NCBI RefSeq assembly: GCF_006345805.1
Contig: NC_043009.1
Coordinates: forward strand, 22,630,001-22,694,000
Direction: 5' to 3'
Source of the DNA: Octopus sinensis
Taxonomy: Eukaryota
Length of the DNA stretch: 64,000 nucleotides
Positions 28,068 through 28,840 of this stretch are shown piece by piece. The notes below the pieces were generated by a model. It had not been told where the DNA came from and ran no database searches. It saw nothing but the letters and a program-made list of their open reading frames with translations. The translations under genes and the position numbers were made by a program. The number at the start of each line of letters is the position of its first letter. The stretch's first letter is position 1.

Positions 28068-28112
<45 letters not shown>

Positions 28113-28323
28113 CAATGATAAATATCAAAGTGAGTTATATACAGTAGCGGTAACACATCGTGACGTATATTTGCCATCTCAATATGGCTACCCCTAAGGG
28201 TGGATGCTACTGTAGTTTTTAGCCCCAGGAGGACACACTCCTCCAGCTGGCCATAGACACACTTTCTGTGTCCTGTCAGTATTTGCAAAGGGAAGTCATC
28301 CTTCCCGTCTTCAACTTATGATA

Positions 28324-28368
28324 CACACGGACTCGAGTTTCGAGGTATTGACCTCTCGTCAGCGTGTG
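28324..28368 (-). ncRNA. Minimal type I hammerhead ribozyme
   Basis: Exact reverse complement of 28593-28637. Confidence 0.9.
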
Positions 28369-28592
28369 ACAATCATAGTTGTCGGCGAGAATTAGATTTC
28401 CTTCACAAATACTTATACTTTTTCCAGCGTCCACTGTCGCTGATATTGAAAAAGTGAAATCAAACATCCACCCTTAGGGGTAGCCATATATCATTGTTTG
28501 ATTTCACTTTTTCAATATCAGCGACAGTGGACGCTGGAAAAAGTATAAGTATTTGTGAAGGAAATCTAATTCTCGCCGACAACTATGATTGT

Positions 28593-28637
28593 CACACGCT
28601 GACGAGAGGTCAATACCTCGAAACTCGAGTCCGTGTG
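28593..28637 (+). ncRNA. Minimal type I hammerhead ribozyme
   Basis: CACACG-CTGACGA-GAGGT(caat)ACCTC-GAAA-CTCGAG-TC^-CGTGTG. All core bases are canonical, stem I is 6 bp, stem II is 5 bp, stem III is the palindrome ACTCGAGT, and the GUC^ site is after 28631. Confidence 0.9.
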
Positions 28638-28800
28638 TATCATAAGTTGAAGACGGGAAGGATGACTTCCCTTTGCAAATACTGACAGGACACAGAAAGT
28701 GTCTCTATGGCCAGCTGGAGGAGTGTGTCCTCCTGGGGCTAAAAACTACAGTAGCATCCACCCTTAGGGATAGCCATATTGAGATGGCAAATATACGTCA

Positions 28801-28840
<40 letters not shown>

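What the first reader, a model, noticed from the sequence alone, without database searches (positions are those of the whole stretch)
28111..28805. Retrozyme-like 352-nt hammerhead unit with evidence of a circular or tandem template
Both arms carry a flawless minimal type I HHR with a palindromic stem III (the dimer-dependent type). The left arm read on the minus strand starts TGTTTGATTTC (28466) and ends TATCATTGTT (28111). The right arm starts TATCATTGTTTGATTTC (28489), so it reads straight across the junction made by circularising the left arm. This gives a 352-nt period with one ribozyme per unit, the layout of circRNA-templated retrozymes. The ~25-nt spacer (28465-28489) is a third piece copied from inside the unit, implying two template jumps in one event. 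Near-identical arms indicate a recent insertion. No recognisable protein-coding content. I do not know of such a family described from cephalopods, but I cannot check the literature.
Basis: partly seen in the sequence, partly recalled or inferred. Interest (0 to 1): 0.92.

Follow-up and report, generated by a model that had tools for sequence, protein, structure and literature searches.

The report
Young hammerhead retrozyme, head-to-head insertion
The 694-bp palindrome is a very recent double, head-to-head insertion of a 352-nt non-coding repeat that carries a self-cleaving hammerhead ribozyme. It belongs to a known class (animal "retrozymes"), here with at least about 1,700 ribozyme copies and the insertion footprints of Penelope-like retrotransposons.

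Summary
There are two 99%-identical inverted arms, a type I hammerhead (HHR) in each, a 352-nt unit read across its boundary, and a 25-nt internal piece at the junction.

It is one locus of a dispersed family. The 33-nt ribozyme core occurs 654 times exactly in this 2.72-Gb genome. A looser pattern for other subfamilies occurs 1,026 times.

Copies form 352-bp tandem arrays of 1 to 6 or more units. Their 5' ends vary. Their 3' ends fall at only two sites, unit 303-306 or 349-352, and almost always abut a (TA)n microsatellite.

About a fifth of loci are head-to-head pairs with both 3' ends outward. In 29 of 33 such pairs one arm starts at each site, and never both at the same site.

Truncation, partial tandems, inverted copies, a one-sided ~48-nt "tail" and (TA)n targeting are the published hallmarks of Penelope-like elements (PLEs). 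Intact PLEs in this genome also end in (TA)n.

Covariation across 82 ribozyme variants supports all three helices. That includes an intermolecular (dimeric) helix III.

Whether the template was circular is unresolved, and no donor PLE was found. Verdict: a real new member of a known kind (metazoan non-LTR retrozymes), of moderate interest.

The parts
28072..28111 (.). Left (TA)n microsatellite, one half of the target site. It abuts the 3' end of the left arm.
   Evidence: In the sampled loci, 29 of 34 outer 3' ends abut a perfect TA run of at least 10 nt.
28111..28466 (-). Left arm: one full 352-nt unit plus 4 nt (TGTT) of the preceding lap, on the minus strand. Its 3' end is at start site S2 (unit 352). 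It is identical to the family consensus.
   Evidence: 0 differences in 352.
28111..28158 (-). The 'tail', unit 305-352: the stretch between the two reverse-transcription start sites. It is present on this arm only.
   Evidence: The PLE tail is described in PMC8557442 and PMC11167929.
28324..28368 (-). Type I hammerhead ribozyme of the left arm. Predicted cut after C28330, read on the minus strand.
   Evidence: (RF00163, 32.2 bits, E 5.9e-6), (covariation).
28465..28489 (+). A 25-nt piece equal to unit 257-281, the innermost (5'-most) part of the right-hand cDNA. It is joined to the left arm through a 2-nt 'CA' overlap. It is joined to the rest of the right arm after a skip of about 62 nt (unit 282-343).
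   Evidence: (D2), and direct reading.
28489..28804 (+). Right arm: unit ~343-352 followed by unit 1-306, on the plus strand. Its 3' end is at start site S1 (unit 303-306), with no tail. It has two private differences from the consensus (205G>C, 272G>A).
28593..28637 (+). Type I hammerhead ribozyme of the right arm. Predicted cut after C28631.
28804..28839 (.). Right (AT)n microsatellite, the other half of the target site.

Best explanation
The locus is one insertion event of a non-autonomous, non-coding retroelement of the metazoan 'non-LTR retrozyme' kind.

The element. It is a 352-nt unit (43% G+C) with one type I hammerhead ribozyme.

Inferred life cycle. Genomic tandem arrays are transcribed. 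Pairs of ribozymes form a double hammerhead through the palindromic helix III (ACUCGAGU) and cut the transcript into 352-nt monomers. By analogy with other retrozymes, these may be ligated into circles.

Inferred integration. The reverse transcriptase/GIY-YIG endonuclease of a Penelope-like element (PLE) nicks a (TA)n microsatellite. It starts cDNA synthesis inside the RNA at one of two fixed sites, S1 (unit C303/G304) or S2 (unit 349-352). Running on a multimeric or circular template gives arrays of 1 to 6 or more units. The 5' end is joined wherever synthesis stops, often at short TA microhomology.

This locus. Both strands of the (TA)n target were primed. The top strand started at S2 and copied 356 nt, giving the left arm with its tail. 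The bottom strand started at S1 and copied unit 306 back to 1, then crossed into the previous lap. It skipped about 62 nt, copied 25 nt more, and was joined to the other cDNA at a 2-nt overlap. The result is a head-to-head palindrome flanked by the two halves of the microsatellite.

Shown from sequence: the family, its period, its termini, its target, its orientation rule, and conservation of the ribozyme structure. Inferred: transcription, self-cleavage, circularisation, and the identity of the enzyme.
For: Family size and dispersal:
- 654 exact copies of the 33-nt core, reversed control 0.
- 1,026 further HHRs of other subfamilies, control 0.
- More than 2,000 first-look candidates for each of two subfamilies.

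Retroposition signature, from 26 loci read:
- Seamless 352-bp tandems with scattered 5' ends.
- 33 of 34 outer 3' ends fall at unit 303-306 (22) or 349-352 (11).
- 29 of 34 outer 3' ends abut a perfect TA run of at least 10 nt.
- The apparent variant 304G>T occurs almost only in array-terminal units, 12 of 13 (the exception is the adjacent unit of L005). It is therefore target sequence, which puts S1 at C303/G304.

Inverted pairs:
- 12 of 59 loci have ribozymes on both strands.
- All but one mixed-orientation locus has every '-' copy to the left of every '+' copy, so the 3' ends face outward. This holds for all the two-arm pairs in subfamily A and 23 of 24 inverted loci in subfamily B.
- Arms share private variants, so they come from one event or one template pool: L018 341T>G; L020 152A>G; L028 233T>C and 241C>A; L022 an inserted G.
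- 8 of 9 subfamily-A pairs and 21 of 24 subfamily-B pairs have one S1 end and one S2 end. None is S1/S1 or S2/S2.

Match to published PLE behaviour:
- 5' truncation, partial tandems, an inverted 5'-truncated copy, a tail at one end and a (TA)n bias are described in PMC8557442.
- A purified PLE protein cuts AT-rich DNA on both strands, extends both, and starts reverse transcription at two internal sites that delimit the tail (PMC11167929).

PLEs in this genome:
- 4,846 GIY-YIG candidates, including intact 775-883-aa ORFs with RVT_1 plus a C-terminal GIY-YIG domain.
- PLE copies are 5'-truncated and bounded by (TA)n.

Ribozyme:
- Complete catalytic core.
- Covariation on 82 distinct variants: 87.4% of cells paired against 80.8% in shuffles (0 of 500 reached it). 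111 double-change cells against 29.8 expected (0 of 500). Slid controls gave 6-53% paired.
- The inner palindrome pairs switch between UCGA, UCGG, CCGG and UGCA.
- Two copies co-fold into the double hammerhead at -33.9 kcal/mol. A single copy prefers a non-ribozyme fold, -14.5 against -8.7 kcal/mol.

RNA and age:
- The 352-nt circle is strongly structured: MFE -117.4 kcal/mol, z = -6.7.
- Youth: the left arm equals the consensus, and family members differ from the consensus by 0.8% on average.
Against: - No sequence similarity was found between the unit and the PLE copies I could read, which represent three PLE lineages. The mobilising element is therefore inferred from signatures, not from shared sequence.
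- There are no RNA data, so transcription, cleavage and circles are untested.
- The Rfam score is 1.8 bits under the curated threshold.
- Arrays contain unit-specific variants. They do not prove rolling-circle copying of a single circle.
- The sample of loci is biased toward high-scoring copies, and the subfamily-B query favoured copies with a tail.
- Microsatellite-specific LINEs exist in other animals and were not excluded by a direct test.
Confidence: 0.8

Rival explanations
1. The same retrozyme family is mobilised by a non-LTR (LINE) retrotransposon with microsatellite specificity, not by a PLE. The inversions would arise by L1-style twin priming.
For: The window and the genome hold intact LINEs, for example a 1007-aa RT ORF at 56681-59704. 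No sequence shared with a PLE was found. From general knowledge, some LINE clades target microsatellites and twin priming gives inversions.
Against: Twin priming puts the outer end of the inverted segment at an arbitrary internal position. Here both outer ends sit at the two fixed sites, always one of each. In the literature read here, an optional one-sided tail and two internal non-homologous start sites are described as peculiar to PLEs (PMC8557442, PMC11167929). There is no poly(A) or LINE-like 3' tail. The PLE copies read from this genome also end in (TA)n.
Confidence: 0.1
2. Two independent insertions of the family happened to land in opposite orientation in the same (TA)n tract.
For: (TA)n tracts are strongly preferred targets and are abundant: 35 tracts of at least 8 repeats in this 64-kb window. 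Double hits will therefore occur.
Against: No (TA)n is left between the arms; they are fused through a 2-nt overlap. In every two-arm pair the '-' arm lies to the left of the '+' arm, and no simple tail-to-tail pair was seen. Arms share private variants. The one-S1-one-S2 rule would not hold for independent events: under independence 8 of 8 has a probability of about 1e-4, taking the site frequencies from single-orientation arrays.
Confidence: 0.05
3. The palindrome is an assembly or long-read artefact, a chimeric fold-back read of a single insertion.
For: Near-perfect palindromes are a known artefact class in long-read assemblies. PLE-type tandem and inverted structures are said to trouble assemblies (PMC8557442). 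I could not inspect reads.
Against: The arms are not mirror images. One has the 48-nt tail and the other does not. They differ at 2 positions, and an asymmetric 25-nt piece sits between them. The same architecture, with different junctions, recurs at more than 30 loci on many chromosomes and in a second ribozyme family.
Confidence: 0.03
4. It is ordinary satellite DNA spread by DNA-level processes (unequal crossing-over, segmental duplication, fold-back replication errors). The hammerhead would be an inert passenger.
For: Tandem repetition is present, and a few loci are clear segmental duplicates (L002/L007; C10:61939365 and 61941500).
Against: There are hundreds of short dispersed arrays with discrete 3' ends, random 5' truncation and a specific target. 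Compensatory changes keep the three ribozyme helices across subfamilies. Both point to an RNA intermediate under selection.
Confidence: 0.02

Closest known systems
Metazoan non-LTR retrozymes with type I hammerheads (Cervera & de la Pena 2020, PMC7229834; coral, mussel, axolotl)
   Same: Non-coding tandem repeats of 150-450 bp, from monomers to multimers, with one type I HHR per unit. They have low G+C, a highly structured RNA, and co-occur with PLEs. Mussel, also a mollusc, has about 5,000 such HHRs.
   Different: No member from a cephalopod-like genome turned up in the literature I could search. Strict (TA)n targeting, two fixed 3' termini and head-to-head pairs with one terminus of each kind are documented here. 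I did not find them described for retrozymes in the papers read. Expression as circRNA is shown for those species and is untested here.
Penelope-like elements (PLEs) and their pseudo-LTR hammerheads (PMC4209133, PMC8557442, PMC11167929)
   Same: The insertion anatomy is the same: 5' truncation, partial tandems, an inverted 5'-truncated copy, an optional one-sided tail, two internal RT start sites and an AT-rich or (TA)n target. PLEs also carry type I HHRs.
   Different: This unit encodes no RT or EN; its longest ORF is 84 codons even on a concatemer. It shows no detectable similarity to the PLE copies sampled. It is a passenger, not a PLE.
Newt and axolotl satellite-2 hammerheads (HHR_Amex1/2; PMC7229834)
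   Same: A short helix III capped by a palindromic tetraloop, with weak activity expected as a monomer and efficient activity as a dimer. Some older subfamilies here have a U-U mismatch at the base of helix II, like HHR_Amex2.
   Different: Here helix III has 2 bp plus the loop, as in invertebrate HHRs. Copy number is about 1e3, not 1e5. Dimer dependence is only predicted here.
Plant LTR retrozymes (PMC4918200)
   Same: Non-autonomous, ribozyme-processed elements that propagate through small structured RNAs.
   Different: The plant elements have type III HHRs in LTRs, PBS/PPT motifs, 4-bp TSDs, more than 55% G+C and Gypsy-type mobilisation. None of these features is present here.

Membership tests
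Type I hammerhead ribozyme (Rfam RF00163) | Score at or above the curated Rfam gathering threshold (34 bits) | tested here: not met
   32.2 bits, E 5.9e-6, full-length match 1-45 on both arms. It was absent from the gathering-threshold scan. The shortfall comes from helix II and loop letters, not from the core.
Type I hammerhead ribozyme (Rfam RF00163) | Invariant catalytic core (C3 U4 G5 A6 N7 G8 A9, G12 A13 A14, A15.1-U16.1, H17) with helix I open and helices II and III closed | tested here: met
   The sequence reads CACACG CUGACGA GAGGU-CAAU-ACCUC GAA AC-UCGA-GU C CGUGUG. Columns 11-14, 16-17 and 32-35 were fixed by the search pattern. Column 36 and H17 were free and are C in at least 90% and 85 of 100 copies respectively.
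Type I hammerhead ribozyme (Rfam RF00163) | Helices supported by compensatory changes | tested here: met
   11 of 15 pairs show double changes. There are 111 double-change cells against 29.8 in shuffles (0 of 500 reached it). 87.4% of cells are paired, against 6-53% when partners are slid. Caveat: the copies are related by descent.
Type I hammerhead ribozyme (Rfam RF00163) | Self-cleavage | not testable with these tools
   Needs in vitro transcription of monomer and dimer constructs.
Dimer-dependent hammerhead (newt/axolotl type) | Short helix III whose stem and loop are self-complementary, so that two ribozymes pair | tested here: met
   ACUCGAGU is a perfect 8-nt palindrome. The co-fold of two copies is the double hammerhead (-33.9 kcal/mol). 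A single copy prefers another fold. Subfamilies keep self-complementarity with UCGA, UCGG, CCGG and UGCA.
Metazoan non-LTR retrozyme | Short (150-450 bp) head-to-tail repeats, one type I HHR per unit, from monomers to multimers, dispersed in the genome | tested here: met
   352-bp period. 59 loci were sampled: 36 single, 11 tandem (up to 6 units) and 12 inverted or mixed.
Metazoan non-LTR retrozyme | Low G+C, no coding capacity, and no LTR, PBS or PPT | tested here: met
   G+C is 42.9%. The longest ORF on a 4-unit concatemer is 84 codons, with no similarity to the PLE ORFs sampled. Units join seamlessly with no terminal repeats. I did not run a dedicated PBS/PPT motif search.
Metazoan non-LTR retrozyme | Accumulates as monomeric linear and circular RNA | not testable with these tools
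   Only a prediction is available: the circular fold has MFE -117.4 kcal/mol and z = -6.7.
Metazoan non-LTR retrozyme | Co-occurs with PLEs in the same genome | tested here: met
   4,846 GIY-YIG candidates, and intact ORFs with RVT_1 plus C-terminal GIY-YIG.
PLE-type integration (passenger of a Penelope-like element) | 5' truncation, partial tandems, and an inverted 5'-truncated copy placed head-to-head | tested here: met
PLE-type integration (passenger of a Penelope-like element) | Two internal RT start sites delimiting an optional 'tail' present at one end only | tested here: met
   3' ends fall at unit 303-306 or 349-352 (33 of 34). In head-to-head pairs there is one of each in 29 of 33, and never two alike. 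The tail is about 48 nt, against 30-40 bp reported for PLEs.
PLE-type integration (passenger of a Penelope-like element) | AT-rich or (TA)n target preference | tested here: met
   29 of 34 outer 3' ends abut a perfect TA run of at least 10 nt, while such tracts cover about 1.8% of the window.
PLE-type integration (passenger of a Penelope-like element) | Sequence shared with the pseudo-LTR or the RT-initiation region of a resident PLE | tested here: inconclusive
   No significant match to L038-L052 or L054.
Plant-type LTR retrozyme | Type III HHRs in LTRs, PBS/PPT, 4-bp TSD | tested here: not met
   The HHR is type I. There are no terminal repeats, and no TSD is discernible in (TA)n.

The most novel reading that the evidence does not exclude
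Head-to-head retrozyme insertions may be a natural record of coordinated two-strand priming by a PLE dimer. In 29 of 33 pairs one cDNA began at site S1 and the other at site S2, and never both at the same site. That suggests the two protomers, or two successive steps of one complex, use different initiation sites. It would explain why the PLE 'tail' sits at only one end.

Because this family is very young (copies identical to the consensus, 654 perfect ribozyme cores), it may still be active. It could then serve as a compact model for PLE integration.

Its palindromic insertions would also yield roughly 310-bp perfect RNA hairpins if transcribed. These could be substrates for RNA editing or RNA interference in an animal known for heavy RNA editing.
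Probability: 0.35. Interest if true: 0.6.

Novelty: new member of a known kind. Interest (0 to 1): 0.45.

Why it matters
Retrozymes are the main home of hammerhead ribozymes in animal genomes, and how they move is still inferred. This family gives unusually clean genomic evidence for the suspected PLE link:
- fixed internal start sites;
- a one-sided tail;
- strict (TA)n targeting;
- a deterministic one-of-each rule in inverted insertions.

These mirror what a purified PLE protein does in vitro (PMC11167929). The family also gives natural covariation support for the dimeric (intermolecular helix III) hammerhead.

It adds a probably still active retrozyme to a lineage where none is described in the literature I could search. 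For genome annotation, it explains a class of short palindromes embedded in TA microsatellites that could otherwise be mistaken for assembly errors or for microRNA-like hairpins. Rfam microRNA models score this locus up to 108 bits.

Tried and rejected
- The Rfam scan at gathering threshold found no hammerhead, only a tRNA-like hit. The E-value mode was needed. The high-scoring plant microRNA matches at the locus simply reflect the long hairpin and were dismissed.
- I looked for a donor PLE:
  - BLAST and Smith-Waterman of the unit against three 10-kb PLE loci and twelve GIY-YIG loci gave nothing above shuffled controls.
  - A 19-nt match (unit 327-345) recurring inside PLE coding sequence was judged to be chance.
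  - tblastn of the unit's 84-codon ORF hit only another retrozyme copy.
- An 88%-identical copy lies head-to-head with a PLE 5' end in L054. It is separated from the PLE by microsatellites and proved to be a member of a second subfamily, not a PLE part.
- A cluster of 5' ends at unit 136-154, near the cleavage site at 133|134, might mark ribozyme-cut templates. I set this aside because 5' junctions generally coincide with TA-like microhomology.
- A snap-back (self-primed) origin of the inversions was rejected because the inner ends of the two arms are usually at unrelated unit positions.
I used printed pattern matches instead.
- ARAGORN found no tRNA in the window.
- The protein search did not reveal the host species. 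The nearest named PLE relatives are filed under bivalve-symbiont bins.
- The organism was therefore not verified. From memory only, the assembly size and contig count resemble a published Octopus assembly.
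Full report
**What is at the locus**

Window 28111-28804 is an inverted pair of one repeat. The tool reports arms 28157-28466 and 28495-28804, 310 nt, 99% complementary, 28 nt apart.

- *Left arm.* It runs on to 28111. Read on the minus strand it is 356 nt, from TGTTTGATTTC to TATCATTGTT. 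That is one 352-nt unit plus the last 4 nt of a preceding unit.
- *Unit numbering.* I define the unit as the reverse complement of 28111-28462.
- *Right arm.* It is unit ~343-352 followed by unit 1-306.
- *Middle piece.* Window 28465-28489 is an exact + strand copy of unit 257-281.
- *Flanks.* The whole structure sits between (TA)20 at 28072-28111 and (AT)18 at 28804-28839.
- *Ribozymes.* Each arm carries the same 45-nt motif, CACACG-CUGACGA-GAGGU-CAAU-ACCUC-GAA-AC-UCGA-GU-C-CGUGUG. Rfam Hammerhead_1 matches it end to end at 32.2 bits (E 5.9e-6), just below the curated 34 bits. This is why the gathering-threshold scan missed it.
- *Cut sites.* The predicted cut is after C28631 (+) and C28330 (-), which is unit position 133.

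**It is a large, young, dispersed family**

- The right arm finds 105 scored matches of 76-100% identity, nearly all 94-100%, in the 2.72-Gb genome. More than 2,000 candidates were left unscored.
- The 33-nt ribozyme core occurs 654 times exactly (332 forward, 322 reverse). The reversed control occurs 0 times.
- The first 100 of these hits fall into 59 loci: 36 with one ribozyme, 11 tandem arrays with about 352-bp spacing (up to six units), and 12 with ribozymes on both strands.
- The consensus of 71 segments equals the left arm at all 352 positions. The right arm has two private changes. Copies differ from the consensus by 0.8% on average, and by 0.3% within the ribozyme.
- A second subfamily, 88% identical, has its own roughly 2,100 candidates with the same period and termini.
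- A looser pattern that excludes the window's subfamily finds 1,026 more ribozymes of several subfamilies, control 0.

**The copies look retroposed, and in a particular way**

I read 26 independent loci.

- Units join seamlessly.
- 5' ends are scattered across the unit.
- 33 of 34 outer 3' ends fall at unit 303-306 (22) or 349-352 (11).
- 29 of 34 outer 3' ends abut a perfect TA run of at least 10 nt. Such tracts cover only about 1.8% of this window.
- The apparent variant 304G>T occurs almost only in array-terminal units, 12 of 13 (the exception is the adjacent unit of L005). It is therefore target sequence, and the first start site is really C303/G304.
- The roughly 48 nt between the two sites (unit 305-352) behave as an optional tail.
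- 5' junctions often share a few TA-like bases with the flank. No target-site duplication can be seen.

**The inversions follow rules**

- *Orientation.* In every two-arm pair the '-' arm lies to the left of the '+' arm, so both 3' ends face outward into (TA)n. This holds for all such pairs in subfamily A and for 23 of 24 inverted loci in subfamily B. The exceptions are a few complex multi-arm loci.
- *Fusion.* The arms are fused directly, or with 2-9 nt of overlap.
- *Shared variants.* The arms share private variants: L018 341T>G; L020 152A>G; L028 233T>C and 241C>A; L022 an inserted G. They therefore come from one event or one template pool.
- *One start site of each kind.* One arm ends at the first site and the other at the second in 8 of 9 subfamily-A pairs and 21 of 24 subfamily-B pairs. 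No pair has two ends alike.
- *Significance.* With the site frequencies seen in single-orientation arrays (13 to 3), eight out of eight has a chance of about 1e-4.
- *Bias.* The subfamily-B sample is biased toward copies with a tail, so its weight is smaller.
- *This locus.* It obeys the rule: the left arm has the tail and the right arm does not.

**Comparison with what is known**

Animal non-LTR retrozymes are non-coding 150-450-bp tandem repeats with one type I hammerhead per unit. They have low G+C and are expressed as small circular RNAs in coral, mussel and axolotl. PLEs are the suspected mobilisers (PMC7229834). A 2026 preprint derives vertebrate retrozymes from PLE pseudo-LTRs (10.64898/2026.07.22.740005).

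PLE insertions are described as 5'-truncated and partially tandem. They often have an inverted 5'-truncated copy and a 30-40-bp tail at one end only, with a (TA)n bias in some clades (PMC8557442). A purified PLE protein cuts AT-rich DNA on both strands and extends both. It starts reverse transcription at two internal sites not homologous to the target, and the tail is the sequence between them (PMC11167929).

The family here shows each of these features.

The genome is rich in PLEs. [quoted passage not shown] The PLE copies I read are 5'-truncated and bounded by (TA)n.

I found no sequence shared between the unit and these PLEs.

**The ribozyme**

- *Helix I.* It does not stop at 6 bp. After an asymmetric internal loop (UGU/U) it continues for about 10 more pairs, so the motif is not 'minimal'.
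- *Monomer versus dimer.* A single 45-mer prefers a non-ribozyme hairpin, -14.5 against -8.7 kcal/mol for the hammerhead fold. Two copies co-fold into a double hammerhead with an 8-bp intermolecular helix III, at -33.9 kcal/mol.
- *Covariation.* I used 82 distinct variants printed by the pattern search. 87.4% of cells are paired against 80.8% in shuffles (0 of 500). There are 111 double-change cells against 29.8 expected (0 of 500). Slid controls give 6-53% paired.
- *Compensatory exchanges.* They occur in helix I (A-U, G-C, U-A), in helix II (G-C, A-U), and in the two inner pairs of the helix III palindrome (UCGA, UCGG, CCGG, UGCA).
- *What this implies.* Those inner positions would form a free tetraloop in a monomeric ribozyme. 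Their self-complementarity argues that selection acts on the dimer.
- *Caveat.* The copies are related by descent, so cells are not independent events.
- *Base of helix II.* The 10.1-11.1 pair is C-A or U-U in most older subfamilies. It is the canonical G-C only in the window's young subfamily.
- *Whole unit.* The 352-nt RNA folded as a circle is far more stable than shuffles (-117.4 kcal/mol, z = -6.7).

**Most likely history of this locus**

A PLE-type complex cut both strands of a (TA)n tract.

1. The top-strand end primed at unit 352 and copied 356 nt. This is the left arm.
2. The bottom-strand end primed at unit ~304 and copied back to unit 1.
3. It crossed into the preceding lap (352 to 344) and skipped unit 343-282.
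4. It copied 281-257 and was joined to the other cDNA through a 'CA' overlap.

Crossing 352|1 shows only that the template was longer than one unit. Ribozyme-made ends would be at 133|134, which every full unit also crosses. The template was therefore either an uncleaved multimer or a religated circle, and the sequence cannot tell which. Arrays hold both array-wide and unit-specific variants, which does not settle it either.

**Rivals**

- *LINE-mediated twin priming.* It would not put both outer ends at two fixed sites.
- *Two independent hits.* They would leave microsatellite between the arms, would give both orientations, and would not share variants.
- *Assembly artefact.* It would be symmetric and would not recur with different junctions at more than 30 loci and in a second ribozyme family (L034).
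- *DNA-level satellite spread.* It does not explain the fixed 3' ends, the target, or the maintained ribozyme.

**Verdict**

The retrozyme reading is supported, and the PLE link is strongly indicated by insertion signatures. The circular template is unproven.

The kind of element is known, including from molluscs. I found no report from cephalopods: no paper in the library pairs 'hammerhead ribozyme' with octopus in this sense, and a detailed 2026 Octopus repeat annotation does not mention hammerheads or retrozymes. The host species was not verified here.

Noticed in passing
L031, L034-L037 (G000 C13:29988995, C5:30250304, C4:156829443, C16:25146363 and 25146794): A second, unrelated type I hammerhead family (GUAC-CUGAAGA-GACCC...GGGUC-GAAACAUGUGUC-GUAC) scores above the Rfam cut-off at 34-48 bits. 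It also lies in (TA)n. It forms a 431-bp tandem (L036/L037) and a 587-nt, 100%-identical head-to-head pair 12 nt apart (L034). The insertion style is therefore not peculiar to one family.
   Followed up: partly
L051 (G000 C1:207472500-207482499), 1-1653 and 5934-7591: A young PLE with a 781-aa RT plus GIY-YIG ORF occurs as two copies 5,933 bp apart, separated by only (TA)12-13. It has its own hammerhead-like motif (CUGACGA...GAAA) about 540 nt downstream of the microsatellite, at 1084 and 7019. Helix I of that motif pairs poorly, and I did not validate it.
   Followed up: partly
L054 8916-9289 (G000 C8:18821915-18822288): A subfamily-B retrozyme copy lies head-to-head with the 5' end of a 775-aa PLE, separated by (GA)n and (TA)n. 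It may be coincidence in a shared target, or a mixed two-template event.
   Followed up: partly
alignment A1, columns 18 and 31: The base pair at the foot of helix II (10.1-11.1), usually G-C in hammerheads, is C-A or U-U in 65 of 82 variants from older subfamilies. It is G-C only in the window's young, most abundant subfamily. This may mark a gain in ribozyme quality that preceded the latest burst.
   Followed up: no
window 28338-28623 and neighbours: Rfam plant microRNA precursor models (MIR5048 at 107.8 bits, MIR2119, MIR2275) score highly on the palindrome simply because it is a long hairpin. Transcribed through, the locus would fold into a hairpin of about 310 bp at -619 kcal/mol.
   Followed up: yes
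window 56681-59704 (-): An uninterrupted 1007-codon reverse-transcriptase ORF of a LINE-like element is flanked by TA-rich microsatellites.
   Followed up: no
window 5602-5664 (-): A tRNA-like sequence scores 52.6 bits in Rfam over model positions 6-65 only, and ARAGORN does not call it. It is probably the head of a tRNA-derived SINE. A SINE-like repeat recurs at 4893-5354, 25149-25592, about 28860-29040 and elsewhere.
   Followed up: no
one search hit list (P0031, P0041, P0062, P0076, P0115): The closest named relatives of the PLE protein (42-58% identity) are deposited as proteins of bivalve gill symbionts (Candidatus Thiodiazotropha, Solemya velum symbiont). These are most likely host-mollusc PLE contigs mis-binned into bacterial genomes.
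   Followed up: no
window-wide: There are 35 (TA)n tracts of at least 8 repeats in 64 kb, about 1.8% of the sequence. This is an unusually dense supply of the preferred target for PLEs and their passengers.
   Followed up: no
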